Shown here piece by piece: positions 4,305 to 54,136 of a stretch of DNA of 64,000 nt (the first letter of the stretch is position 1; each line of letters begins with the position of its first letter). The stretch comes from Marsupella aquatica (Eukaryota > Plantae > Marchantiophyta): NCBI GenBank assembly GCA_973895155.1, contig OZ316897.1:2805416-2869415 (forward strand), written 5' to 3'. The notes beneath the pieces are model-generated. The model made no database searches, was not told the DNA's origin, and worked only from the letters and a program-made list of their open reading frames with translations. The translations under genes and the position numbers were made by a program.

Positions 4305-7300
4305 ATGGAGGGAATGAAGAACCTCAGCGGAGGCTCACCTGCAGCAAGAGAAGAAACCGTTGTGGTCTTTGTAAGAGACGGACTGTTGAATTCGAAGGCC
4401 AAGGACGATGGAGCTTCCAATTTCTGCTCTCCGGCGAGTGAAGCAAAACCTTATGAACAGGAATTAAAGGATGCTAAGTGTGAAGGCCGTTGCACGAGGT
4501 TGGATGCATCTCAGTTGAAGGGCTTGAAGCGGAAGAGTTTGGATGCTACCGAAGGGAAGGGCTTTGAAATTGGGCTTTATCATATGAGCAGTGCTACAAT
4601 TGATAAGAGCGGCGGAGAGGAAGTTGAAGGGAGTGGGAGGAGGCTTACAATTGATCCCAAGAGAGGAAACGGTGAGAATGGCTCCAGATTACAGAAACGC
4701 TTAAAGTTGAAGGGCTCCATTAGTAGTGGGACAGAGCAACGCTCGGATTCCGCAGGAGGAAGACGTACCAAAGAAGATGGGCAAAGGGTGATCGATTTGT
4801 CGAAGGTTGAGAAATTGCAGACTCGCATGGAAGGTGGGAAGTCCACCGGGCCAACAGAGGACAAGAATGGCAGAGCAAGTATAGGTTTGGACGATGAATT
4901 CAAAACGAAATCGGGCGCCCAGGACCGCTGGAAAGGAAACCATCATGGCTATCTGGGTGCGGACTTCGACAGTTCAAGGATGACGCATAGAAGAGAGAGA
5001 GATACAGAAAATAGAACGAATGGGCAGCATCCCAGGGAACATTCCGAGGAGGATTGTCCAGGAATCACACGGAAAGCAAAGGTGGACTTCCGACATTCGA
5101 CGAGAAACGTTCATAAAGGCAAAAATGCACCATCGATCAAAAGGGATGGTATCTTGGAAAGGGATTATTTGAATTGGGGGAGAGGAACCATCACCAAATC
5201 CAGAAGTGGGGAAGATTCAAAGTCTAGGAGGGATGCGCCAAAGAGGTGCAAAGAGGAAGTGGATGTGGTAAGAGAACGGGACAGCAAGGTTTTCTTTGAA
5301 GGTCATGATGTGATAAGAGGGGAAAACAGACTGCCTAGGGATAGAAGTGAGCGCTTCAGATCTGGAGAAGTCGACGAAGAGAATTTCGAAGGTCGGCGGG
5401 ACAAACAAGGAATTGCCCATGAAGACAGGAAGCATGGAGACAGCAGGCGACATGGTAAACATTCAAGACGCGATTGGAAAATGGAGAATGGAAATATATC
5501 TCATCAGCAGGAAGAGGATGGCTTAACGAAACCGAGGGCTAGCAGACGTTTCGAAGTTTATCCCTCCCCCGCAACAATTGACAAGCCTCGATCATTCAAA
5601 GAAGAGTACTTCAAGGGCAATGTTGAACACCACGGACACTCAGTTGCAAGTACTCATATGCAACATGCAAGGGGCATTGCATATAGTCATTGGCAAGAGG
5701 ATCAATATGATCACAGGGATGGACACAAGTCTGGCAACAAGGCAGATCATGACAAAAGTTTGCCTAGAAACCAAAGAAAAATGGAAAAAGCTGGCAAAAA
5801 CGAAACTTACATTGAAAATCGGTTAGACTTGGTGCAAACGTCCGGGGATCAGAATTCCAGGAAGGAGAATGTGGATCATTTTTCAAGAGGAACGAAAGGG
5901 ACAAATCAGCTAGGGACTATGGACAGCAAGGTTGCTAGACATGAGGTGGCTTCAAAGATACGCAAAGCCGTAGGGGCCAGCAGGAGGAGCTGCAGTATCG
6001 ACGTCGTTACTTTCAATCAGCCAGATGAACAGGATGTACACAGAGTTACTGATCAAAATGGAGGAAAAGGGCAAAGAGCATGCATTGAAGCAAGAACGCT
6101 GGAGACTTGCTCCCAGAGAAATAGTTCGTTGGATAAAATAAGTAAGGCGTCAAATCTGGAAGCTGCGAAAAGCTTTGAGGGGGAAGGACGTCGTGGCGCA
6201 ATTGAAGTGTCAAGACAAGTGCTCGTAGAAGGTGATCATGGACCAGGAACTGTCATCGAAGATATGTTACAACAAAGTATGAGCAACTCACCGATTCTTG
6301 AGAAGAGAGAAAGGAAAAATTGTGGTAAAATATCTGAAGGACTTGAGAAACTGAGACGGATAGGTGCCCAGAAACGCAGAAAATTAGATGGTCAAGAGTT
6401 TAAAAGTATTCTCGAGAACAGGGGCAAAGATGGATTTCAAGTCGAGGAAACTGCCAAACAAAAATCGCTTTGCAATGAGAAGGATGTTCAGGAACGGATA
6501 AGGTCCGACAGCAGGACATCTAAAACCTCGGATGAAGCACTGCAAATGAAACAAGCGAAGAAGAAAAAGACGTCTGATGAATCGTTGTTGAGACGGCAGG
6601 TGGTCAATGTTGAAAGGCATAAGCGTGATATATTTTCACGGGATCACAAGCTTCAAAAGCGCCGCGGCAGATCCCACTCTGTGTCACCTAGGAAGCGTAA
6701 GAATTTTGTCTCACCGAAGGCACATGGTAAGTCAACATCCCCGGGCAGATCAGAAAGGTATAGGTCAGATTGGGACAAATTTGAAAGAGGGAGACGCAAA
6801 ACCCTTGCTCCCTTTGACAGCAGGTACCGTCGTTTTGGTGGAGGCACTAGTGGGCTTGGAGGATACTCACCAAGGCGTCGGAGGTCCGAGGCAGCTGTCA
6901 AAACCCCTTCCCCACCCGCTAGATCACCAGAGAGAAAGAAAGAGAAAGCGTGGGATTCAGTACCGCCTGGAATGGATAGTTCTATGATTGCAGCGATTTC
7001 GGCTGCTCATCAAACTGCGGTGCAGCATGCCCTGGCTGCACTGGCAACGGTGAATCCATTAGTCCCGAGTAATATGCTGATGTCATCTAGCAGTACACCC
7101 TCCGTTGCCAATCGCCTTACAGCTGTTCCATCTTTGCTCTCATCTCTCCAACCACAAATAAATCCAGCAGTCACAGCTGTGATTTTGACGCAAGCAACAA
7201 GGCCATTGAGGAGGTTGTATGTGGGGAATGTTCCTTCTACAGTTTCAGATGGAGAACTTCTGGAGTTCATGAATGCAGCCATGCTGTCAGCCAATGCCAA

Positions 7301-10300
7301 CCACCTGCCGGGAACCAAACCATGCATCAACTGCTCAGTATGACATACTTCTCTTCTTCTCTTGTTAACTGCAGATTTTGCTTGAATATGGGCACTCTAG
7401 ATTCAACACGCGGATGTAAAGTTAGACGTTTTGATGACAGCATTTCAGTAACCGTGCGGAGTATTTAGTTCCTAATATGGTACTTGTTGACTTGAGCTTG
7501 CATCTTTACACCTTATTTCCGCACCAGGTCAATATGGAGAAGAATCATGCGTTTGCCGAGTTCATAACTCCTGAGGATGCAACTGCTGCGCTTGCATTTG
7601 ATGGTGTAACTTTGCATGGGACTACCTTGAAAATTCGGCGGCCAAAAGACTTCGTTCAGGCTGCAGTAAGCTGAAATAAATGAGACTATTCGTGATGTTT
7701 AATTTGTCCGTAGTATTACGAATTTGAGTTATTGGCTTCTCTATTCGAAACAGAGTGTGTAGATATAAAGCCTCCTTCAACATTTGGATTCCAATTTAGA
7801 CTCTGCATTTCGTTCTAATCCCCATGGTTAGAAGAGAGGAGCTTGAAGCACTGAAAACCCTTTGCTGAATTTCGGGGTTCAGGTCATCAATAAATTTAGA
7901 AATGGATGTCAAAGTTGTCAGCTGTAATAAGGATGATCCAGGGCTTCACAAGAGTGGCACATGAGGCCTTTGAAAGATCCTGTTTACTTTTTCTGTAAAT
8001 GAAACTTCTAAATCTTGTTGCCACCAAATTTTCTTGGATTATACATCGGTGTGCATGAAGTTCCTGGGTGGAAGGTTCAAAACTCTTCTCTCTATAGTAG
8101 ATCCCCCGAGCCCATTGTCCTAGCTGTATTCAATTCTGAGGTAGAAAATTTATGCAACAGGGGTTTGGATTCAGATCATCGCCATTGTGGTGCAGAATGG
8201 GGGAATCGAAAGTCTATCAGCAGTCCCTGATACGGTCTCAAGCCGTGTAGTAGATTCTCCTCACAAGGTATCTAATTCAAACCTTTTTGCCGATTTCCAC
8301 TCCCAGAAGAGAACTCAGATTTGAATATTTAACGTCCATTTGACATTCAATGTTATTCATCTCTCAGTGTTGGCATCTCAGCTAAATTTATAATAACTAT
8401 ACTTGTTTGAGTCTATTTTTCGCAGGTATTTGTAGGGGGTATCCCATCATCGCTCACTGCGGACAAGGTGAAAGTCGGGTTGGCAGTGTCGATTAGATAT
8501 TTGCATTGGCTGATTGTTGCAAGTTGTACGTAATTGGGAGAAATTTGTGAGCTTAATTCTTTCTGAAATTGGTGGGGTGTCGGGGATTTTCATCTTATGT
8601 CTGGCTGTTTTCTTTTAAACTTGCAGTCTCATTAATTTTGCACTGAGATTAATCTCGTATCCTGTCTGCGATTGCAGGTGAAAGAGATCGTTACTGCTTT
8701 TGGACAACTGAAGGCTTATCATTGGGAAGTGGACAACAAAAAGCAGCCTCCGCAAGCCTTCGCTTTTCTGGAGGTAATTTTTGCCTTCAGTTCTTTTGAG
8801 GTTTGTTTAAGATCAGACTTTTTTCTCTTGCAAACTCTGCCATAAGATTGAGCTATGTCACACATTTAGGGCAGGACATCCTTAACGAAAATGGAATAAT
8901 CACGGTGGTTGCCTACAGCAGAAAACATTATTGCACAACCGAAGCTTGGCAGGTTTTCATGACACAGCTTCAAATTGTGAATCGCAGTAAACATTCACCA
9001 ATGGTTTTCACCTTTAAGTCACGGCCCTTTGGTAGGGGAATCGTCGTCTAGAATGGAAAACTTGCATTAGCCTCATGAGGATCAAATCATCTTCTAAGAA
9101 ACTGACCGCACATACCATGGACTTTACAGCTTTGAATTAATAATATACTTCTAGAGGTGCAGGATGATGAGTGGCTTCCTTTATCTAATCGACGTAGCAG
9201 GGGGACCTTGTCCAGGAAAGTGTCGGGCTTTCTTACGAAAGGTGTCATTATTGTAAATCATCTCATATTCTTGGTGCAATTAACCTCTTTGGATTGTCAC
9301 ATGTGCAGTACATGGATCCAACGGCAACAGTGACTGCGTGTGCTGGACTGAATGGCATGAAGCTAGGAACGGGGTTTCTCACGGTGGTTCAGGCAACCCC
9401 TGATGCTGACACCAAGGTATATCCTTCGCTCTAGAATCAGCCGTGTCCTCCATACCCTGAGCTTCGGACTAGAATGTATGGTTGAAGACACGGCATCCTC
9501 TCCCAAAAACATTTGAAAGATTTCTCAAGAAGTCCATTTTCCCTTGCAGAGTGCTAGCAACAGGGCTCCGTTTTATGGGATCCCTGAACACGCTAAGAGC
9601 CTGTTGGAGCCCCCAACTCGTGTCTTGGAGTTGCACAACCTGGTGAGTGTAAACCACATCTGCAATGTATTCATTTGTTTAATTTCTCTCTGGCTTTTGG
9701 ACGGCTCTAGACGTCGAGGACGGTGTCATGGTTTAGCTTGCATGTGGTAGTATATCCACATATGTGCTGTCCAAGTATCTCATCTGCTGTTCTTAGTCAA
9801 AATGATGTTCGTAATGTTAAAAGCAAATTGTCGTTTCAGGTGGCTCCAAAGGACGTTCCAAACATGTCCAAAGAAGATATTGAAGAGCTTATTGAAGATG
9901 TAAGACTTGAATGCATAAGGTGATCTTGCCCTTACCAATTTCGTGTAATGGTTGGCCTGCCTTCTTCCCGTGCCACAAGAACAGAGGGTACCAGGTAGTT
10001 ACTTTGGGAGTCCAGATGTACATGCCAGTCCACGATGTCCCTTTTGACAGTAGGTTCTCTCTATAGCCGCCAAAAGGAGCACTGGATGCTTTGTGCTGCC
10101 CTTGTTCAATGCTGGCTTGTCTTTAACTTGCGTTTTTTTTGTCTCTCGAGCAGGTTTGGGAATGTGAAGTCAACTCATATGGTATACAAGAGGTCACACT
10201 GCGAACTTGAAACAGGAAATGTACCAGCTGTTGCCATAACCGAAGCTGATACTGCTGAAACCAGTAAAGGAGAAAATTTCGATCGCACAAATGTGATAGA

Positions 10301-10958
10301 ATTAGCACAAGAGAACATTGCCCAGGAAGATAACCACGTTGGGGTTATGGAGACTTTGGAAGAGATGAGGAGTGGCCCTGCAAGATTACAATCGGGCACT
10401 TCTTTCAAAACAGATGAGAAACAGATGCTACCCACTGGTCCTGTAGATAGTTTGCCTTCAAGTCGCTTATGTGAGGAAAACGGAGATAGTACTGAAGAAA
10501 ACAACCATCACTTGCACGAGTTCTGTGCAATAGACACGGAAGTTGCAAAATCACGAAGTGTTTCTGCGGAACTCAGCAATGACTTGCAAGCACGCACAAG
10601 TGCAAGTCCAAGTAATAAGGTTATTCCCACTGCCGGGCATGAGTTCGTACGTGTCCAAGATCAGTATACTGGTGGATTGACAAGTGGCTCCGGGCAAGAA
10701 GATGTTTCCATGAGAGAATGGGAGAACTCACACATGGGAAAAGTATATGTGGAGTTCTCCAGGCAGGAGTCAGCTTGTCAAGCTGCTCATGCTCTGCATG
10801 GGCGTCTGTTTGATGGTCACAAAGTGGGCGCATGTTACTTCCCCTTAAAGCTGTATAAGGAAAGGTTTCACAAGGGTCTTGACCCTCCCACGTTTGAAGA
10901 GGAGCAGGCCCTTGCAATACCTGTCGAGGGCCATTTGACTGCCCATATAAAGGACTGA
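4305..10958 (+). CDS. U2AF65-like (U2 snRNP auxiliary factor large subunit-like) splicing factor with very long charged N-terminus, RS region, RRM1, RRM2 and an interrupted UHM/RRM3
   Basis: In-frame GT-AG exons: 4305-7337, 7528-7665, 8196-8267, 8426-8467, 8678-8773, 9309-9416, 9550-9642, 9840-9919, 10154-10958. Motifs: RS/SPR-rich segment, KKEKAWD (ULM-like Trp), QATRPLRRLYVGNVP, HAFAEFITPEDATAALAFDG...LKIRRPKDF, DSPHKVFVGGIP, AFLEYMDP...ACAGLNGMKLG, PTRVLELHNL...IEDVRLECIRFGNVK, GKVYVEFSRQESACQAAHALHGRLFDG. Confidence 0.9.
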
Positions 10959-11315
10959 ACAGTAGGTATCTTTCTCTCTTAAGGGCACTGCCAGTGGGCT
11001 GCTCGTTAAGACAGTCGGGGCTGCTTAGTAAGGCAGATAGATACACTTTCACTCATTGTTTCCGGATAAGTCATTAGTTAGCTAGTCATTTGTTGGCATG
11101 GTTGTCATCTGTGACAAGAATGTTACAAAATCAGGAATTGAGACGGGAGTCTTTCCCAAGTTGAATTCACCTCCAGGAAATTCGCATTTGCTTTGGGCTG
11201 GTTTAAAAGGTTTTGGATATTCTCTACACTCAACTGTGAAGAACTCCAACATGACAGAATTGGAGAAATTCTCTCTCCACTTCGTGACGTTTTGTGGTGG
11301 AACCACGAACGCTCT

Positions 11316-11395
11316 GACTATCACAAAATTTCCGTGTGATTTGAAGGGGAAATCGACTATCACAAAATTTCCGTGTGATTTGAAGGGGAAATCGA
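11316..11395. repeat. Perfect 39-bp tandem duplication
   Basis: GACTATCACAAAATTTCCGTGTGATTTGAAGGGGAAATC x2, starting at 11316 and 11355. Confidence 0.9.
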
Positions 11396-11517
11396 ACATT
11401 ATATAGTAACCTCAGCCAGAATGTTTGTCTTGGCATTCGTGAAAGACATGTATTCTACTCCTGTACTAGAAAGTGCAATAGATTTCTGTTTTCTACTTGC
11501 CAAGCTCACAGCTCCTA

Positions 11518-44658: not shown

Positions 44659-47600
44659 ATGTCTCTCATGGAGTGCCAATATACAAGTGATGGCAATACT
44701 TGTCTTTCTGGGGAGGTGACGTTCAGAAACTCTAAAGAAATACTGGGATACGATAATCTTCGAAATATCTTGCAGTATGCGGGTGACCCCATCTCCGCTC
44801 CTGGAGAGCTCAGTACCGGCAGCACTCTTTTGTTCGACATTGCTCAATCTTCTCAACAGACCGTAGCAGCGTTGAATTACGGAAGCGGCTGCACCTCTGA
44901 CTTTTCAGGATTTTCCCCGGGCCACCACAAGTCTTACGCTACATCATTTTACCGCTGTAGATCTCCAGAAGAGACGGAGAGTACGATACTTCAACCTCCA
45001 GTAGATGAAATCGAAGACCGTCTCAAGATCTGCTCAAGATTGTGGACGCCAGGCATTCTGAAGCCCCCTGCTGATCGAGATCATCTGAAAACGGCATCAT
45101 TGGTGACAGGATCAAAGGCCAAGGATGATGGGATCCTGTATTGCCCGCAGGATAGCGACGAGGCCGCCGCTACAGGAATAGTGATGGAGAAAATCCTACG
45201 TGACCACTTCCAAGCTACGTCAGAACCGAGTTCCTATCCCAGTAAGACTCCCGTCAATTTTTCAGGCAATGATCCGTGTCCAACTTTGCAGGGCATTAGA
45301 GAGCCTCAGGATAGCGCACTTATGGAGAGTATTCTAACTTCAAGCCCACGGATTGAATGCGAAATGAGCGAAGAACGCTCTCCATCCGGGCAGCCTGATC
45401 AATTCGCTCGCATGGTTTCCTCCGAGTTTAATTTAGTGCGGCCAACATTCAGACGACCTCTTGAAGTTGCCTGTAGCGTCCAATTAAAAACTAGCCGAAA
45501 GTGGAACCAGCAAAGGGCGTCTCGTCAAGGCCCAGAGACGTCCTTTAGTGCGCCATCTTGTAAATCTGAGAACAAGCCAGAAAAAAAATGTACAACATTG
45601 ATGACAGACAGGGTGGAGCGGGCCACTAGCCTGCCAAAGCGGAGGAGGCGGACCTGGATCAGCAGGGGTGATCCTTCAGCCGAAACCCAAAGAATAACCC
45701 ACATTGCAGTGGAACGGAATCGGAGAAAGCAGATGAACGATCATCTCTCTGCCCTGAAAGCTTTGATGCCCAGCACGTTTGTTCAAAAGGTAAGCATATT
45801 CTTCTCATTCATACTCAACTTGAAATAGTCTTCACAATCTTGTCTAGAACCTAGAGAACCGGATTTGATCGAATTATTTCACAACATGGTCGATCTTCTA
45901 GCGTAGAGCCACCTTCTTCTCTCATTTCATAACTTACGTAGAGCCACCTTCTTCTTTCAATAGTAGGAAAGGTCACCGTGAGCTTCTCGTTCTGCTACAG
46001 TAGTTTACAATCATGCAATGTTCCGAAGGTATTATGTACGAACTCGCATGAAGTTTCAGCTTTTAAAGTCGATTAGGACGGCACAAACATATACGTATTA
46101 CTCTAGCTGCAAACCTTTTAGAGCCCGGCGCGGAATCGTTCTTTGCCTTCAACCCACTGGAAGCTTGCATGGCGAGAATTTGATGATTTGGAAGCCCCCA
46201 ATGTAGTACTTCCCATTTATATTCTCAATGAATTTCCACCGACACCTCTTGGCATGAGAGTGATCGAGCTCGGCATCAATAACTTTGCACAATCATATGG
46301 ACCAACCAGCTTCTAAACATCAAAGGCACAATTTTGTTTGATATTCTCAATTTAAGCTATCACCATATTTGAATTCTCGAAGTCCTGAAGTCCATCATTG
46401 CTCTGGGCAAGTTATCTGCCTATGTAGGAGCTCTCACATCATCAAACTGGCGTTATATAAGTTAATTAAGGTTCCTTTGATTGTAGAGGTGGTTAGGTAC
46501 TTCGATAAATTGTTTCCCCACCTATACGAGTTCAAGTTACACAAAACTGATATGAACTATGCTGGGCTGGATTTCAACGCAGACTGATCAAGCATCCATA
46601 ATCGGTGGCGCCGTGGAGTTCGTCAAAGAACTGGAGGTGCTTTTGGAATCATTGCTATCAAAACAACGAAGACGAAGTCATGCAGAAATTCTTGGTCCTG
46701 GTTGGAATCGGTTTAATAATATCCACCCTGGGCGACTGCTTTGCGCACCTTATGCAGCTGCAGCAGTTGGATATTCTCCATCAGTTTTATCAGCTAATGC
46801 TACTTTAGAAGACCATACCAGTAGAATGTCATCTAAACGGATAACCATGAGCTCCGAGCTGCTTGCAGTGCTTCCTGAGAATACAAGAGTGACCACTGAG
46901 TTGAGGGCAGAATGCAGATCTACTGCAGCCACTGTGGAGGTGAAGGTTTTTGGGAGTGACGCCATGGTCAACATTACAACTCATCATAGAGCGAAGCAGC
47001 TGGTCAAAGTCATCGTGGCCCTTGAGAGCCTCGACCTCAACATTTTGCATATAAGTGTTACTACAAGCAATAGCACTGTACTCTACACGTTCAATGCCAA
47101 GGTATGAATGTCAATTGCTCGCCCTGATCGATCGACAGTGTGGATGATTGATTAGGAAATGGTTTTGGACTTCATCTGTATACATACTTATAATGTTCAC
47201 TGGAACCATTGTGAATTTGATGCCCCAGCCGATTCGCACGATAGACGTAAGATCAAGAGGTACACGGTGGTACTTATGCTCAGCTTCAGCAGATTTCAGA
47301 CCAAAAACATTGATATGTGCAGTAGTCCCCCATATATTACTATAAGGCGGAAACCGTACGTAAGCGTTGAACCTTCGCTTTTGTAAGTAGTGATCAACTA
47401 AAATAGTTAAAACGAGTCCGAGATGCCAAAAGTCATGTCGAACCAATTCAATTTGTCAAGGCTGTGAGCTTGAAGGCCGTCTCCAGAGTAGCCTCCTGAA
47501 ATCGAATAATCTTCTTTTAGGTGATATGCGACAAATCCATGGCTTCGAACCCGGGTCTTCAAATGGCAAGCTTTTTCAACGTGGACTCAGCGTAAGTACG

Positions 47601-47755: not shown

Positions 47756-49659
47756 TAGCAACTTTTCTAGCAGTCTAGCATTTCCAACTGATATGGCAGG
47801 TCCGCTGGTAAAGTTAAAGATGGACACTGAAGCAGCTGATGCATGCATGAAGTGATGAATTGGGCTGGATAAGCTCCTCACGGCAGCATATACCATCTTT
47901 TAATTTCTCGAGTGACCGGCCACATATATAATGTGCAGCTCTAGAGTGTTCAGTGATCAGCTCCATCGCTACTAACAGCTAGTGTTCAGACCTAAACGCG
48001 AGCTTTCCAGACTGTAGCTTTAGTTTCACTTTGGTAACTAAAAGTAATTTTCTCGAGACCTCCAGACTGGAGCAATTCAGTAGAAATCAAGGTATATAGA
48101 AATGCAGGAGCTTTTGAATGCATTTGCATCGCAGACCTAGAACTTATCGACCGAAGGATAGCCTCGGTAACATACAAAATGGTACCCATTAGGCTCTGAT
48201 CGAATATGTGCAATGATATCCTGAAGGTACACGTAGGCCAGAGGCATATGATCTCGGCACCATGTGCAGTGCTCCAGGGTCCCTTTATCTAGCAGGAACG
48301 AAAAAATCAACATCTATCGATCAAAAGGGACACAATATAATTGTCTATAAGACGATATGCTATTTAACTCCATGGTCAGGATTGCAGCCTGCTGCCAAAG
48401 TGATAAAAACAGGGATTCATATGATGGCGTTCAATTTGCTTGCAACAACCAATGATCTGCTAGTTAACTCGTTAAATCAGAGCCATTGCCTTCTGATTTC
48501 ATGAAAGGAAAGATCCAATCATGCTGCTAGTGCTGAGCTTTTGATGTCAACAGTGCCCAGCGAGTGTGTAAACTTTGAGGTAGCGTCCGACTAGCTAGGC
48601 AGGCTGGCTGCACAGACAGTATTTTAAATTTACTGCCGGCCTGAGTCCTTTACACGAAGCGACAATTTCATGATTTGATCTCGACGTTGGGCCATGTACT
48701 TATGTACAAACCTGGACGGCACAGCGCTCTACTGAGGAGCTTCACTTTCGAATTCCACCCAGGTTGGGCCGCTGGTTCCATTCATCTTTCCTGAACGTAC
48801 GTTCCCGCACGTCGACTTTGACCATGTATAGAAGTACTCTGACCTTCAAGATCCATGTGTAAGCAGATGAGTGCCCAATGCAGCCTAAAGGAAAGCTCAT
48901 AGTGGTGCACAGTTCCATGATCTACTTGAAGGGTTGTGCGAGCTTGCTTGAAGACCTTCGAGACTGAAAGGGACTGTCTTAAAAGCTTGGCAATTCAAGA
49001 GCATGGACTATCTATCCAAGGGTACTCTGCTACTCGCTCAATTGCTGTTTTGAGTCGCCATTCGTGTCAGAAATGAATTTCTTGTGAAACGTACAGCATG
49101 TACGTACCTTACTCGGATTGACAGACAGCCCAGGGACAAAGATGTTTGACGGAAAAGGAAATCCATTCGCTTTTGAAGCTACGATTGATGCATGGAGCTA
49201 GCCTATCAGGCAGTGTGGTACAAGGAAACTCGCGTCACCAGCGATCGAACCCAGGGGGATGGCATTTTTTTCTGGACTGACTGTCTCTCTAAGCCACTGT
49301 GGTGTTGAACGAAAGGCCTTTCCTAGCTGGCCTGCCACTGCCACCTTATACTTTCTGGAATTCGATTAGCGAGCAGGCTCGATAGCTCAGTACACGCTTT
49401 AGCTATCCATGTCAAGAATGGGCTGTTCCGCAGAAGGAAGCCTGATCGTGATTGAAGTTAGCCCAAGTCATGTACATATAACCGGTAATGATAGCTAGCC
49501 ATTTGTGTGGATGCATGCTCAGCCAGCCTCACATCTCGGTAATGAGGTTAACTAAGGATGAGACGTTTCAGTGCCCCTTGTACAATGAATTATGTGTGCC
49601 TCTGGGAGAGCAGTTAGTCCCGCAGTTAGTTAGTAATTTGTGATTTTTCTCTTTTGGAT

Positions 49660-52620
49660 TTCTGAATGCATTAATTTTCAATACAGCCTACCTTCTTTGA
49701 GTATGTGATTATGCAAAACACCATAATTGTAAGAAAAGTAAAACCAAATAATTATGCTTTTACAATATAAGATAGAATAATAAATTGTATATAAGATTAC
49801 AAGATTTACTTTCAACTTCTTTAATTCATGTTTTGGCCAATTGCACAGTAACCACTTTTGCATCTGAATCTGAATGGCTTAGAATCTGAATGGCTTCAAT
49901 TTATTTTATTTCAGAGATTTTATTTTCCGTCCATTACTAAAATTAAATCACTCAAGGGTATTTTAAGTATGTTAATGTCCTAGTTATGAGCATTATGAAA
50001 GTAATGGCCCTCAAAACTTGGGCTTGTGCTCTTGTTTTGGGTGACCATATATCTCACAATGCCATCTAAACAGTACACTATCCTATACATTAAGGTCATG
50101 TTTAGAGTACATTGTGGAATATAATGCCCTGGAAAACAAGAGCCCATACATTAAGGGGGGGGGGGGGGGGGGAGGAGTCACTATATGGAGGGCCATACAT
50201 CGTGTGTGAAGTTGTAGGGTTTGACCCCCTAATTACAAGTGATTTTTTTCCTTTAAATTTTGCCATTTTTTATTAAAAACCCCTTTAAAACTTTTTATAA
50301 AGTATTTTTTATAAATAAATAGGCCTATGTGTTCTTTAAAGCCGACCAGTCAATAAAACATGCCCTATGTGTTTTTACATAAAACTTTGGAAGTCTTCCG
50401 CTACACCCATTTAAATGGGCCTATATTTTGTTGCAAGTGATGTGTCACTTCCGTGGAAGTGACTCCCCTGAGCCCATAATGCCCCAAAACTGAGTATTGA
50501 GGGGTTATTATTATTACCCACACATGCTCCCTAATCAACATCTTACTACTGAAAGACCTGAAAGATTTTTAGATGTTCCAACTTTAGTAAACGTAGAGGA
50601 GAATCTTTCTAAAGAGGCGATCCAGATCTTGTCCAGGGCATTATGCCCCATAACGCCCTCATAAATACAATCAGAAACATAGCAAAGGGCTTCATTAGTG
50701 TGAGCTTGAACTTACATTAATTCTAAACTGGCTTGCACATCATTCTGAGTAGTACTCTAATGTATCCTATTATCTAGGTTTAGAGGTGTGTGGTAATAGT
50801 AATATAAGGTGTCCTACTATCTAGGTTTAGAAGTGTGCGTGTCACCATTATGAGTGGTAGTATAGTGTATACTACTATTTAGGTTTAGAGGTGTGTCTGG
50901 TATACCCTGGGCCCTCACTCCATGTAAAAGAAGTGGACCCCCCTGCGATCGGGCCCTTTTCATGTTTACCCCTTCCATTTTACCATTAAAAGTTCCCTTA
51001 TTACCGATAATAATTATAATTATTAGTTCAAAATGAATAAAAACTATCCTTCGAACGTTTGCACGTCCTCCACATATTAGTTAAGACTGAGGGCCCAGGG
51101 GTGGTATATGAGCAGTTAATGTTCAATTTGTGTTTGTGATTAATAGTTAGTTCTCTTTTTGTGAAGGCTTGAAAAACCTTCTCTTGTTCCTGCTCTCATG
51201 CTGTGAAAAAAGACAGTAGTATTTATCCCTCCTCTTCACTCTTGAACCAAATGAATGGATTTAATTGAGTTCTAAGACGTGGGGCGAACAAGAAGCGACT
51301 GAAGGTGAGAGTTGTGAGCTTGAATGTTTTCTGGTTGTAGTTTCTGTGTCCTTGCAGATGTATGTATGTTGGTTTATCTCTAGAAGGAGAGTCATCAAAG
51401 CCTGATCTTTTCATGCGGGCCATAACAAATCCTGCTAGTAATGTATGGTACAACAAGGTGCACAAGGTAAGAAGGGATATTGCTGCTAAGTCTCTGGTTG
51501 GGCTGCCACCTGCTCTGTTTTCTAACAGAACTGGAAGGACCACATTGATCTCACGCCTAGCTGCAAAAGGGGTCCTTGATGTAATTGGTATGTTGATTAG
51601 AGGACACTACTCAATTGGAGGTTATATATTATCGCTATGATCGAACCCAAGAACTGAAGATGGAGGCTGCAGCGTTTGTCTCTGCTAGTACAGGCCTTGA
51701 TTATGATGGAGCGCTAGCATATGTTTCTAAAGACTTCGCTAGGGACAAGCTTGTTGGATCATCTGAGGTTTTGAAACCCGCTGTTGATAGGGTGAGCGGG
51801 AAGGCCAATGTGCAACCTTCAATGATGACGCTTAAATGTACAGGTGAGTGAACACACCTTGATTTGTTTATTGAGTGTAGTTTCTTGGTGTTACTGTTGA
51901 TGCTAAGTGCTTTGTTGACAGGAATCTACAAGCTCAAGAGAAATAGGAGAAAACATCCACACTAGTTTCAAACCAGGTTTGATTGACTGTAGTGTTCTTT
52001 GGATTTGTTTTACTGTTGGCTGTCCTGTTTATGTTTATAGCAAGAGATTATATACATGTCTGGAGATATGATTGTACAAAGTGCAGATGCTGCCAAATAG
52101 GATTTGTCCTACGACAAAATCAATTGGGTTGGCGAGTTGCTTAAGCAGAACCCTGCTCTTCAAGAGAAAATTTCACGTCCAGTACAAGGCCAATTTTCTG
52201 TGGGCAATAACATTTCAGGAAACCCTTTCCACAATTGTTCAGCGACAATAGAAATTGTTAAGGCTGGGGAGGAGGACAAGAAGGAGAATGCAGGCTAGGA
52301 ACTATTTAGCTTTCAGATTTTATAATTCATTTAGGAGTTAGTAGGAACATTATACACGCTGGATTAATTTGATTTGGAGGTCACCAAACAATATGTTAGT
52401 ATTATTGAGATACTGTAGCGCATTCACTCTCAGATTTATTATCTGATTAGATACTTAGCAAGATATCAGAAGTCCATCAGTAGCATTAGCACATAAAAAC
52501 AGACATTAGAGGATGACTATCAACTCAGCATTATTCCAGATCTGGCTAGATCAGCACCTGTAACAATGAGAATATTTTATGATTGCGTCAACCATTGAAT
52601 GTTTTTACTACTTGGTTAAC
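49660..52620. mobile_element. AT-rich putative Crypton-type element (boundaries approximate)
   Basis: Shift to AT-rich, CpG-poor sequence containing a G18 run (50155-50172), imperfect inverted repeats, ATCTAGGTTTAGA.GTGTG x3 (about 50772-50897) and the tyrosine-recombinase remnant listed next. Termini not identified. Confidence 0.45.
51362..52298 (+). pseudogene. Degraded, intron-containing tyrosine recombinase of the Crypton/DUF3504 type (C-terminal catalytic half)
   Basis: LFMRAITNPASNVWYNK...LFSNRTGRTTLISRLAAKGVLDVIGMLIRGHYSIGGY, then a frameshift in the TATA run at about 51623-51630, then YRYDRTQELKMEAAA. This matches the YR box II pattern (H/K/R)xxR...GH-x8-Y. The C-terminal GNPFHNCSATIEI resembles the FxNCxxxI tail of DUF3504/Crypton proteins. 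GT-AG introns at about 51305-51357, 51844-51921 and 51977-52040. Confidence 0.7.
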
Positions 52621-54136
52621 CATGGAATGGCTGGCCATGAATAAAAGCGAAATCTTTTGAAGACTCAAATTGTTACAGATTCTTGTTTGGCGTCAATACT
52701 AAAGGTCACTAAAATTATCAAAGCTATTTACACTCCAAGGAAAAAACCTGGAAATTCACCAAAGTGAATAAATTTCAAACCTAATAATATCACCTGGCTT
52801 TGACAGTTTGTGGACAATTCTGAGCTTGCTCAGAGGATGGAAAATGCAAACTGAATTGACAGAATACGCTGTTTGGACCAAACATTTTTGAAATGGACGC
52901 AGTGTTCTTTTCCCATCCAGCAGCTACAAAGTTCCGTAACTGTGTTATGAAGTTCTGTACCTATATTACAGAGTTCCGTAGGTAATGTTAAGGGGCTACC
53001 TTGATGTCAAATGTGTCAGGAGGCCAGATTATGGGAATAGAAGGGCCACCCAAAATAGGTTACAAGTAACCTGAAACCAAGACTGTCAGTGCGGTAACCA
53101 GTATTATCGAAGTACGACCCCATATCCTTCCACTCTACTTGTTCAATTTCATTGGAAAAAGTTTATCTGGCCCCAGTACCAACTCATCTTCGATGGGTCC
53201 TTTCGATCGTGGACTAACGACTGCTGGGACTGCAGATTCGGACAATCTAGGGACATTCATTAAGTCTCTCTCTTCTGCTCTGCTATAGTTTTGAATCCAA
53301 TAATGGGTATACCCTCGTTCCCACGACCTTGGGTGACAGTGGGAGCCGTTCCCTTAAAGTGCCAGGTAAGGGTTACCGCGTGGATATCTCCGTTATCAAT
53401 TTTTATTTCAGGCACGCGAGGCAATGCAACCAATCACAGGGACTGCAGTAGGCGCTACAATTATAGACATAAGTTGAGGTGGTGACAATTAGGGTAGAGA
53501 GTCCCAGCTACAGAAACATCGGATCTCCGATCAGCGTACGTCACACTGCACTAGTGCGACATACACAGGATCAGCCTGTCATCTAATTCAAAAAGCATTT
53601 GCTTTTGAAACCTGATACACATCACATGGTATCGTTACCGACTCTCAGGACAGTCTTCAGTACCTAATTGTCTCTTGAATTTCCATGTTACAAAACATAA
53701 GCTAAATGTTGCGGGAACTGAAAAATTGCCAAAACTGGTCTCCAAAGACTCGTCTGTGTTATTATACCCTCACAAAAAGAGGGTGAAAAAAAAATTTGGG
53801 CGGGGCATCACAACTCTATTCAATAGGTGCTGGATGTGTACCTATGGACTGTAATTTGAACATATGGAAGATACTGCGGGCGGCGGCTATTTTACACGAC
53901 AGCTTCCTACTTACATCGGGACAGTTTAAGTTGAAGAGGCTGGAGTATAACCCACGTACTCAAAGTAGGCAAAATCAAGGAGTTGCTAGAACTCAGGCGC
54001 ATCTTGACAAAACTAACCCATAACAGTAGTCTTTCATGTTGACATTAGCCCGGCCCAGGACTAGATATCCCACATGAAAGAAGGCTCGTGAGTTTCACAG
54101 GGTGGAGGGAACACCTCTTGAACACGACAATGCAAT

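What the first reader, a model, noticed from the sequence alone, without database searches (positions are those of the whole stretch)
51250..52298. Crypton/DUF3504-type tyrosine recombinase relic in a land-plant genome
Seen: two short ORFs (51362-51640 and 51615-51851) join across a frameshift. Removing 4 nt from the TATATA run gives ...VWY...FSNRTGRTTLISRLAAKGV..IGMLIRGHYSIGGYYRYDRTQE, placing a Tyr (codon 51636-51638) nine residues after the His of GH (51605-51607) and downstream of an NxxGR motif (Arg codon 51536-51538). The gene carries spliceosomal introns and ends in FHNCSATIEI. Established: HxxR...GH-x8-Y is the box II catalytic signature of tyrosine recombinases. Cryptons are intron-containing, YR-only DNA transposons, and their DUF3504 relatives were domesticated in animals (ZMYM2/3/4, QRICH1, KCTD1). 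They are classically reported from fungi, animals and stramenopiles. Inference: this is an internally deleted copy of a plant Crypton-like family with a variant NRTGR in place of NHSLR, which implies autonomous or domesticated relatives elsewhere in this genome. No RT or RNase H is adjacent, arguing against a DIRS retroelement. The N-terminal catalytic Arg region is not visible.
Basis: partly seen in the sequence, partly recalled or inferred. Interest (0 to 1): 0.85.

Follow-up and report, generated by a model that had tools for sequence, protein, structure and literature searches.

The report
Dead Crypton-type recombinase transposon relic
This stretch is a broken leftover of a jumping gene that moves with a cut-and-rejoin (tyrosine recombinase) enzyme; the family occurs in liverworts, I found no paper reporting such elements from land plants, and this copy is dead and adds little to better copies the scan already found in this genome.

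Summary
ORFs 51362-51640 and 51615-51851 are two halves of one reading frame, broken in the TATATA run near 51625.

The pieces match a small protein family (tblastn E 1e-35) seen in the liverwort Calypogeia fissa and in unnamed contigs. Intact members keep a tyrosine-recombinase active site: Arg, Lys, [Lys/Arg]-x-x-Arg, His, and Tyr nine residues after the His.

Five weak tests point the same way:
- Pfam DUF3504 at 4.4e-5 and Phage_integrase at 0.002, both below Pfam's cut-offs.
- QRICH1 as the best PDB profile hit.
- Language-model neighbours at 0.97-0.98, all DUF3504/Phage_integrase clusters.
- Type IB topoisomerases, QRICH1, Cre and XerH heading two fold searches.

No RT or RNase H lies nearby, so it is Crypton-like, not DIRS.

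The window copy is dead. Two deletions of about 550 bp remove the first catalytic Arg and the Lys. It also has a TGA at 51266 and the 4-nt frameshift. Related contigs at 87-92% identity show it is multi-copy.

The ends are not resolved. The scan already reported better copies of this family elsewhere in this genome.

The parts
51173..51304 (+). Remnant of exon 1 (N-terminal helical domain, ...VKKDSSIYPSSSLLNQMNGFN*VLRRGANKKRLK). It carries an in-frame TGA at 51266-51268 where the relative L005 has Arg, and lacks about 45 codons.
   Evidence: tblastx of L005 461-556 against 51194-51289, E 3e-5. tblastn of P0025 150-178, E 0.011. Colinear family-HMM hits.
51305..51357 (+). Intron 1 (GTGAGA...CCTTGCAG, 53 nt) at the same position as intron 1 of L005.
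   Evidence: The exon/intron junction AACAAGAAGCGACTGAAG|GTGAG matches L005 AACAAGAAGCGGTTGAAG|GTAAG, and the acceptor ...CTTGCAG is shared.
51358..51843 (+). Fused exon. The start of exon 2 is joined to the middle of exon 3 by a deletion of about 414 nt that removes box I Arg (IRGGxEL) and the SKN Lys. What remains is the C-terminal half of the catalytic domain: VWY, NRTGR (Arg 51536-51538), GH (His 51605-51607) and RYDR (Tyr 51636-51638). A 4-nt TA expansion at about 51625-51631 shifts the frame.
   Evidence: tblastn E 1e-35 to 6e-36 with a frame switch at 51625/51627. phmmer gave 22 family hits, best 9.8e-21. Alignment A1. L005 comparison.
51844..51921 (+). Putative intron (AG|GTGAGT donor at 51844, TTGACAG acceptor ending at 51921). 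The exon end matches the exon end of P0009 in C. fissa. The stretch after it (51922-52100) is not recognisably conserved, and the proposed splice runs into a stop.
   Evidence: Sequence. P0009 exon map. No similarity found in 51846-52100. No RNA data.
52101..52298 (+). Last exon with the family's conserved C-terminal motif (SGNPFHNCSATIEI...EEDKKEN). The stop TAG is at 52296-52298.
   Evidence: tblastn of P0009 528-587 against 52110-52292, E 2e-4. The same motif occurs in L005 and P0011.
52299..53064 (+). 3' non-coding part. Related contigs partly share it (aligned stretches 52772-52899 and 52957-53064). The tentative right end is at the centre of the palindrome GGTTAC-AA-GTAACC (53058-53071).
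   Evidence: read laying: related contigs at 87-92% identity stop at 53064, unitigs of X1 and X2 break at 53036-53064, and depth falls to the single-copy level beyond about 53235. Palindrome read.

Best explanation
The locus 51173-52298, probably with its 3' tail to about 53064, is a decayed, non-autonomous copy of a Crypton-like DNA transposon. Its only enzyme gene is a spliced tyrosine recombinase. The family lives in liverwort genomes.

Intact relatives encode a protein of about 450-640 aa. It has a helical N-terminal domain and a C-terminal catalytic domain. The active site reads Arg (IRGGxEL), Lys (ERxSKN), [Lys/Arg]-x-Gly-Arg (replacing H-x-x-R, as Lys does in type IB topoisomerases), His (GH) and Tyr nine residues later (RYDR).

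By analogy with Cryptons (inferred, not shown here), the enzyme would excise the element as a circle and reinsert it by site-specific recombination. It would need no reverse transcriptase.

The window copy cannot make an active enzyme:
- Two internal deletions of about 135 and 414 nt remove part of the N-terminal domain, the first catalytic Arg and the Lys.
- A CGA-to-TGA-type nonsense codon lies at 51266.
- A 4-nt TA expansion shifts the frame between His and Tyr.
- The 5' part of the gene is missing, and very-high-copy repeat units (one with clear MITE features) lie just upstream.
For: Family membership of the window copy:
- tblastn E 1e-35 and phmmer E 9.8e-21.
- Its own 99-aa piece has Phage_integrase clusters among its nearest ESM Atlas neighbours, score 0.96.

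Recombinase nature of the family:
- Conserved R/K/[KR]xxR/H/Y pattern with correct spacing.
- Pfam DUF3504 at 4.4e-5 and Phage_integrase at 0.002 on P0017, each matched by 4 of 9 members.
- QRICH1, a Crypton-derived DUF3504 protein, is the top PDB profile hit, E 0.03.
- ESM Atlas scores of 0.97-0.98 with 193-198 shared features to DUF3504/Phage_integrase/QRICH1 clusters.
- Of 48,161 chains, the best eight are type IB topoisomerases, QRICH1, Cre and XerH, Z 4.1-6.0. Foldseek lists are headed by Cre.

Recombinase-only element:
- No RT, RNase H or methyltransferase within about 4 kb in the window.
- None is consistently present beside the three C. fissa genes. L001 only has a separate Ty3/gypsy element with its own rve integrase.

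Multi-copy and decaying:
- Several related contigs at about 87-92% identity in runs of two organisms.
- C. fissa P0020 has Arg-to-Trp and Tyr-to-Phe changes.

Deletions and intron: comparison with L005.

Host context: a plant bHLH gene lies 4 kb upstream. Its nearest named relative is C. fissa.
Against: - All profile and fold scores are below the usual significance thresholds: Pfam below gathering score, PDB E 0.03, Z 6 or less, and model pLDDT 54-67.
- The element's termini, target-site features and any empty site were not established here. The left end is obscured by high-copy repeat insertions.
- Copy number is inferred from contig variants, not from assembled copies.
- No RNA data exist for the locus.
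- No phylogeny against named Crypton clades was possible, so 'Crypton' here means recombinase-only, intron-bearing and DUF3504-like. It does not mean a proven clade member.
Confidence: 0.8

Rival explanations
1. It is a pseudogene of a domesticated host gene family, a plant counterpart of the animal DUF3504 genes, rather than a transposon remnant.
For: C. fissa annotators called three divergent multi-exon genes. No termini or target duplications were demonstrated here. P0020 has lost Arg I and Tyr, as domesticated DUF3504 domains have (Kojima and Jurka 2011, PMC3212892).
Against: Most members keep the full catalytic set, unlike domesticated DUF3504. The locus is multi-copy with related contigs at 87-92% identity. 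It lies in intergenic, repeat-rich DNA and carries several independent disabling lesions. Earlier scan reports describe bounded 3.2-3.6 kb copies in this genome (leads only, not tested here).
Confidence: 0.12
2. It is the recombinase module of a DIRS/Ngaro/PAT-type retroelement whose RT part was lost.
For: DIRS-type elements are known from green algae and other plants (PMC4157794). One ALOG/Phage_integrase cluster appears at rank 13 among the Atlas neighbours.
Against: No RT or RNase H lies near this copy, and none is consistently present beside the three C. fissa genes. The family matches DUF3504, which DIRS/Ngaro recombinases do not match according to PMC3212892. The gene has spliceosomal introns, which a retroelement would lose.
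Confidence: 0.05
3. The motif resemblance is a chance feature of unrelated decayed sequence.
For: Pfam finds nothing on the window pieces themselves.
Against: tblastn E 1e-35 to family proteins with colinear exons, plus a conserved intron junction.
Confidence: 0.01

Closest known systems
CryptonA elements and Crypton-derived DUF3504 domains (KCTD1, QRICH1, ZMYM2/3/4; Kojima and Jurka 2011, PMC3212892; Glomhoppers, PMC13465315)
   Same: The recombinase is the only enzyme and the ORF contains introns. The sequence signature is DUF3504-like (RGGxE box I, SKN/TKN Lys, P..vWY, xxxR, GHxS...Y). QRICH1 is the best solved relative by profile and among the best by fold.
   Different: The host is a land plant (liverwort-like), whereas Cryptons are reported from animals, fungi, oomycetes and diatoms. 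The His of H-x-x-R is replaced by Lys or Arg. A conserved C-terminal motif (GN.F..C.I.I/F ... KEN) was matched here only to other members of this family. Pfam scores stay below the gathering cut-off, so it is a distant lineage. Clade placement was not tested.
Type IB topoisomerases (human Topo I, vaccinia/variola topoisomerase)
   Same: Same catalytic fold. They are the top structural matches, Z 5.0-6.0. From my own knowledge of the vaccinia enzyme (K220-x-x-R223), Lys occupies the position of the recombinases' first His. The family's K-x-G-R matches that.
   Different: The sequence signature and N-terminal domain are of the Crypton/recombinase type. It is a multi-copy, decaying genomic element, not a housekeeping gene.
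DIRS/Ngaro/PAT tyrosine-recombinase retroelements
   Same: They are eukaryotic mobile elements with a tyrosine recombinase and are known in the green lineage.
   Different: Here there is no RT, RNase H or methyltransferase, introns are present, and the sequence has DUF3504 affinity.

Membership tests
Tyrosine recombinase / type IB topoisomerase superfamily | Catalytic residues Arg I, Lys (beta-hairpin), His/Lys-x-x-Arg II, His/Trp, and the Tyr nucleophile about 9 residues after the His | tested here: met
   Intact relatives (P0011, P0017, P0025, L005) have IRGGxEL, ERxSKN, N[K/R]xGR, GH and RYDR with Tyr at His+9. The first His is replaced by Lys or Arg.
Tyrosine recombinase / type IB topoisomerase superfamily | The window copy itself encodes the complete active site | tested here: not met
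   Arg I and the Lys are deleted. Only R-x-x-R, His and Tyr remain, and these are split by a frameshift.
Tyrosine recombinase / type IB topoisomerase superfamily | Profile match above the curated threshold (Pfam PF00589 or PF12012) | tested here: not met
   The best scores are 24.0 bits against a cut-off of 29.7 (DUF3504) and 18.4 against 27.1 (Phage_integrase). E-values are 4.4e-5 and 0.002. The window pieces give nothing.
Tyrosine recombinase / type IB topoisomerase superfamily | Catalytic-domain fold | tested here: inconclusive
   The AF2 catalytic-domain model has pLDDT 66.9. The top 8 of 48,161 chains are all topoisomerase IB, QRICH1, Cre or XerH, but at Z 4.1-6.0. Foldseek's top hits are Cre at E 0.17-0.4.
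Crypton (recombinase-only DNA transposon) | No reverse transcriptase, RNase H or methyltransferase in the element | tested here: met
   None lies within about 4 kb in the window. None is consistently linked in C. fissa loci L001-L003.
Crypton (recombinase-only DNA transposon) | Intron-containing recombinase gene | tested here: met
   The intron-1 junction is conserved between the window and L005. C. fissa genes have 5-6 exons.
Crypton (recombinase-only DNA transposon) | Repeated, bounded copies with definable termini or target features | tested here: inconclusive
   Related contigs exist. The right end is tentatively at the 53058-53071 palindrome. The left end was not found, and no empty site was shown.
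Crypton (recombinase-only DNA transposon) | Phylogenetic placement among CryptonA/F/I/S recombinases | not testable with these tools
Domesticated DUF3504 genes (ZMYM, QRICH1, KCTD1 type) | Loss of catalytic residues in a conserved single-copy host gene | tested here: not met
   Most members keep the catalytic set. The locus is multi-copy and decaying.
DIRS/Ngaro retroelements | RT and RNase H (with or without methyltransferase) linked to the recombinase | tested here: not met

The most novel reading that the evidence does not exclude
The relic belongs to a lineage of recombinase-only (Crypton-like) DNA transposons in land plants that I did not find described in the literature. The lineage uses a topoisomerase-IB-like Lys/Arg-x-x-Arg active-site variant. 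It was mobile recently enough in liverworts to leave several 87-92% similar deletion derivatives, possibly mobilised in trans. That would extend Cryptons to embryophytes.
Probability: 0.6. Interest if true: 0.65.

Novelty: new member of a known kind. Interest (0 to 1): 0.45.

Why it matters
Cryptons are rare. They are recorded from animals, fungi, oomycetes and diatoms (PMC3212892). I found no paper reporting them, or DUF3504-type recombinases, from land plants.

A liverwort lineage would widen the host range of recombinase-only transposons. It would also give a natural Lys/Arg variant of the H-x-x-R motif to study.

This locus is only a dead, truncated copy. Its value is as one more dated insertion and as evidence that deletion derivatives exist. 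The informative copies are the intact ones elsewhere, which the scan has already flagged in this genome.

Tried and rejected
- Pfam on the window pieces found nothing.
- phmmer of the 92-aa piece against PDB gave only ankyrin and dehydrogenase noise.
- A PDB profile search with the full-length-only alignment A3 found nothing.
- The word-based protein search found only 4-6 family members.
- AF2 of full-length P0011 modelled the N-terminal domain with high confidence and left the catalytic domain and C-terminal tail mostly below pLDDT 50.
- blastn between the window and the C. fissa loci or Logan contigs showed no conserved non-coding ends.
- The search for terminal palindromes or hairpins in L004, L005 and the window's 3' tail gave nothing convincing.
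- The inverted and direct repeats around the relic are at chance level. The exceptions are the repeat-unit TIRs and the 55-bp tandem repeat.
- An early idea that 51341-51358 is coding (FLCPCR resembling FILTWK) was dropped once L005 showed that 51305-51357 is intron 1.
- The region 51846-52100 shows no similarity to P0009.
- Exact look-up of eight window ORFs in the protein collection found none, so the species was not identified that way.
- No RNA run holds the locus.
All searches used the pieces by reference.

Full report
**Observation**

The sequence contains the two ORFs exactly as described, 51362-51640 and 51615-51851 on the + strand. It also contains a third ORF, 52104-52298, ending ...FHNCSATIEIVKAGEEDKKENAG.
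- The Arg codon of NRTGR is AGG at 51536-51538.
- The His of GH is CAC at 51605-51607.
- The Tyr of RYDR is TAT at 51636-51638.

tblastn with family proteins switches frame at 51625/51627. For example, P0001 residues 25-110 map to 51389-51628 and residues 109-171 to 51627-51815, with a joint E of 1e-35. All relatives read G-Y-x-R-Y-D-R. The window has 7 nt where they have one codon. A 4-nt gain in the TATATA run therefore accounts for the shift, and without it Tyr sits nine residues after His.

**A real protein family**

Pfam sees nothing in the short window pieces. However, phmmer of the 92-aa piece against 1.84 billion representatives finds 22 proteins, best E 9.8e-21.
- Named members are all 'unnamed protein product' of the leafy liverwort Calypogeia fissa: P0009, P0020 and P0025.
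- The rest come from unnamed Logan or metagenome contigs.

The alignment shows two subgroups. The window copy belongs to the one with N-R/K-x-G-R ... G-H-H/Y-T/S (P0001, P0003, P0005, P0009).

**The family is a tyrosine recombinase**

Intact members (P0011, P0017, P0025 and the gene on L005) share these motifs:
- RFxIRGGxELYxL, the box I Arg followed by Glu.
- ERxSKN, the hairpin Lys.
- P..vWY.
- SN[K/R]xGRTT, which is H-x-x-R with the His replaced by Lys or Arg.
- GHxSxGAYxRYDR, with His and then Tyr at +9.

Independent tests all point to one superfamily, though each is weak on its own:
- Pfam gives DUF3504 at E 4.4e-5 (24 bits, cut-off 29.7) and Phage_integrase at E 0.002 on P0017. Four of nine members match each.
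- The best PDB profile hit is QRICH1, a Crypton-derived DUF3504 protein. It scores E 0.03 and aligns at the P..vWY segment.
- For P0017 residues 180-530, the three nearest ESM Atlas clusters score 0.97-0.98 with 193-198 shared features. They carry DUF3504, Phage_integrase and QRICH1 domains.
- The window's own 99-aa piece has Phage_integrase clusters among its nearest neighbours, at 0.96.
- An AF2 model of the catalytic domain (pLDDT 66.9, with the expected beta-hairpin) was aligned to 48,161 PDB chains. The best eight were human, Leishmania, variola and bacterial type IB topoisomerases, QRICH1, Cre and XerH, at Z 4.1-6.0.
- Foldseek lists for both models are headed by Cre.

From my own knowledge, Lys replaces the first His in type IB topoisomerases (vaccinia K220-x-x-R223). 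The K/R-x-x-R variant is therefore compatible with catalysis.

**Crypton-like, not DIRS-like**

Within about 4 kb of the relic no ORF matches RT, RNase H or a methyltransferase.

Beside the three C. fissa genes there is no consistent RT. L001 has a separate Ty3/gypsy element with its own rve integrase 4-8 kb upstream. L002 has none. L003 has a small Copia scrap.

The gene has spliceosomal introns, which argues against a retroelement origin:
- C. fissa P0025 and P0009 map to 5-6 exons.
- The metagenome scaffold L005 carries a nearly complete gene of the window's subgroup with GT-AG introns.
- L005's intron-1 junction, AACAAGAAGCGGTTGAAG|GTAAG...CTTGCAG|, matches window 51287-51357, AACAAGAAGCGACTGAAG|GTGAG...CCTTGCAG|.

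Kojima and Jurka report that DIRS and Ngaro recombinases do not match DUF3504, whereas Crypton recombinases do (PMC3212892).

**Anatomy of the window copy**

The comparison with L005 gives this layout:
- Exon 1 remnant at 51173-51304 (tblastx E 3e-5). It has a TGA at 51266-51268 where L005 has Arg, and about 45 codons are missing.
- Intron 1 at 51305-51357.
- At 51358 the first bases of exon 2 are joined to the middle of exon 3. This deletion of about 414 nt removes box I Arg and the SKN Lys and is out of frame.
- The rest of the catalytic domain runs to 51843, with the 4-nt frameshift.
- A consensus donor AG|GTGAGT lies at 51843/51844, at the same place as an exon end in P0009.
- A non-conserved stretch follows at 51846-52100.
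- The conserved last exon is 52101-52298.
- The 5' part of the gene, about 150 codons in L005, is absent. Very-high-copy repeat units and a small tandem repeat lie upstream.

The copy is thus 5'-truncated, twice deleted, and carries both a nonsense codon and a frameshift.

**Copy number and borders**

Two runs of the source organism (A) and two of a related organism (B) hold the locus. None is RNA.

Laying their contigs on the window gave these results:
- Depth is at the single-copy level outside about 49628-53235.
- Depth is 2-5 fold over the relic.
- Several distinct contigs lie at about 87-92% identity, for example over 51645-52009 and 52772-53064. Up to 12 contig variants occur at single sites in organism B.

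The family is therefore multi-copy. Related contigs carry substitutions at 51630/51631. Among the indels that the tool listed, none lies there, so the frameshift may be shared, but this is unresolved.

Unitigs of both source runs break at 53036-53064, and related contigs stop at 53064. That point is the centre of GGTTAC-AA-GTAACC (53058-53071). I offer it only as a tentative right end.

The left end could not be found. A contig joining 49654 to 52751 through the same 24 nt appears in three runs and remains unexplained.

No conserved non-coding ends were seen against the C. fissa loci or the Logan contigs.

**Host**

A bHLH gene with the plant ACT-like domain lies at 44659-47107. Its best named relative is C. 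fissa, at only 50% identity. The host is therefore a plant nearest to liverworts among the named proteins, and it is not C. fissa itself.

**Literature and earlier scan notes**

Cryptons are described from animals, fungi, oomycetes and diatoms (PMC3212892). DUF3504 CryptonA elements were recently described in Glomeromycota (PMC13465315). Plant TE databases hold only automatic 'Crypton' labels (PMC8729191). I found no paper describing a Crypton or DUF3504 recombinase in liverworts or other land plants.

The scan itself has already reported this family several times on other pieces of this genome. Those reports include apparently bounded 3.2-3.6 kb copies and a His-to-Arg active-site variant. 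I treated them as leads. My data confirm the K/R variant and the recombinase-only nature. They neither confirm nor refute the end structures described there.

Every search used the pieces by reference.

**Verdict**

The locus is an ordinary dead copy of a family that looks unpublished, and the scan already holds better copies of it. I score moderate interest for this locus and higher interest for the family.

Noticed in passing
window 50905-51100: A 196-bp MITE with terminal inverted repeats CCCTGGGCCCTCACTC / GACTGAGGGCCCAGGG, flanked on both sides by TGGTATA. Contig depth is 1e4-1e5 in all four runs, so it is an extremely abundant family.
   Followed up: partly
window 50105-50660: A second very-high-copy unit bounded by imperfect 32-nt inverted repeats, with a poly-G run at 50155-50173. 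An adjacent 48-nt-arm hairpin lies at 50025-50146.
   Followed up: no
window 50738-50896: Three tandem copies of a 47-58 bp unit (...CTATCTAGGTTTAGAGGTGTG...) immediately upstream of the MITE and the relic. Earlier scan notes mention Crypton copies lying in small tandem repeats. A link here is untested.
   Followed up: no
window 49654 / 52751: Contigs in three runs (X1, X3, X4) join 49654 to 52751 through the same 24 nt (GTAATTTTGGTGCTTTTATGGGAA) at single-copy depth. They could be a deleted related copy or another repeat. This is unexplained.
   Followed up: partly
window 44659-47107 (+): A plant bHLH transcription factor gene (HLH plus ACT-like domain). Its nearest named relative is in Calypogeia fissa, at only 50% identity.
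   Followed up: partly
window 4305-7343 (+): A 1012-aa ATG-started ORF with no Pfam match and no exact match in the protein collection.
   Followed up: no
L003:10001-11470 (Calypogeia fissa, P0020): This family member aligns across 10001-11470 with no clear intron (the annotator spliced out a 42-aa segment) and has Arg I replaced by Trp (CIWGG) and the catalytic Tyr by Phe (ACFDR). It is either a decaying or a domesticated copy.
   Followed up: no
L001:3266-6172 (Calypogeia fissa): A Ty3/gypsy-type retroelement (RVT_1, RNase H, rve) whose last ORF ends in a PHD finger. It lies 4-8 kb upstream of the recombinase gene P0009.
   Followed up: no
L005 (ENA ERZ12295330 scaffold_42362_c1, 2692 bp): A nearly complete gene of the window's subgroup with all catalytic residues and GT-AG introns, found in an assembly filed as a metagenome. 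A prokaryotic gene caller split it into four 'genes'.
   Followed up: partly
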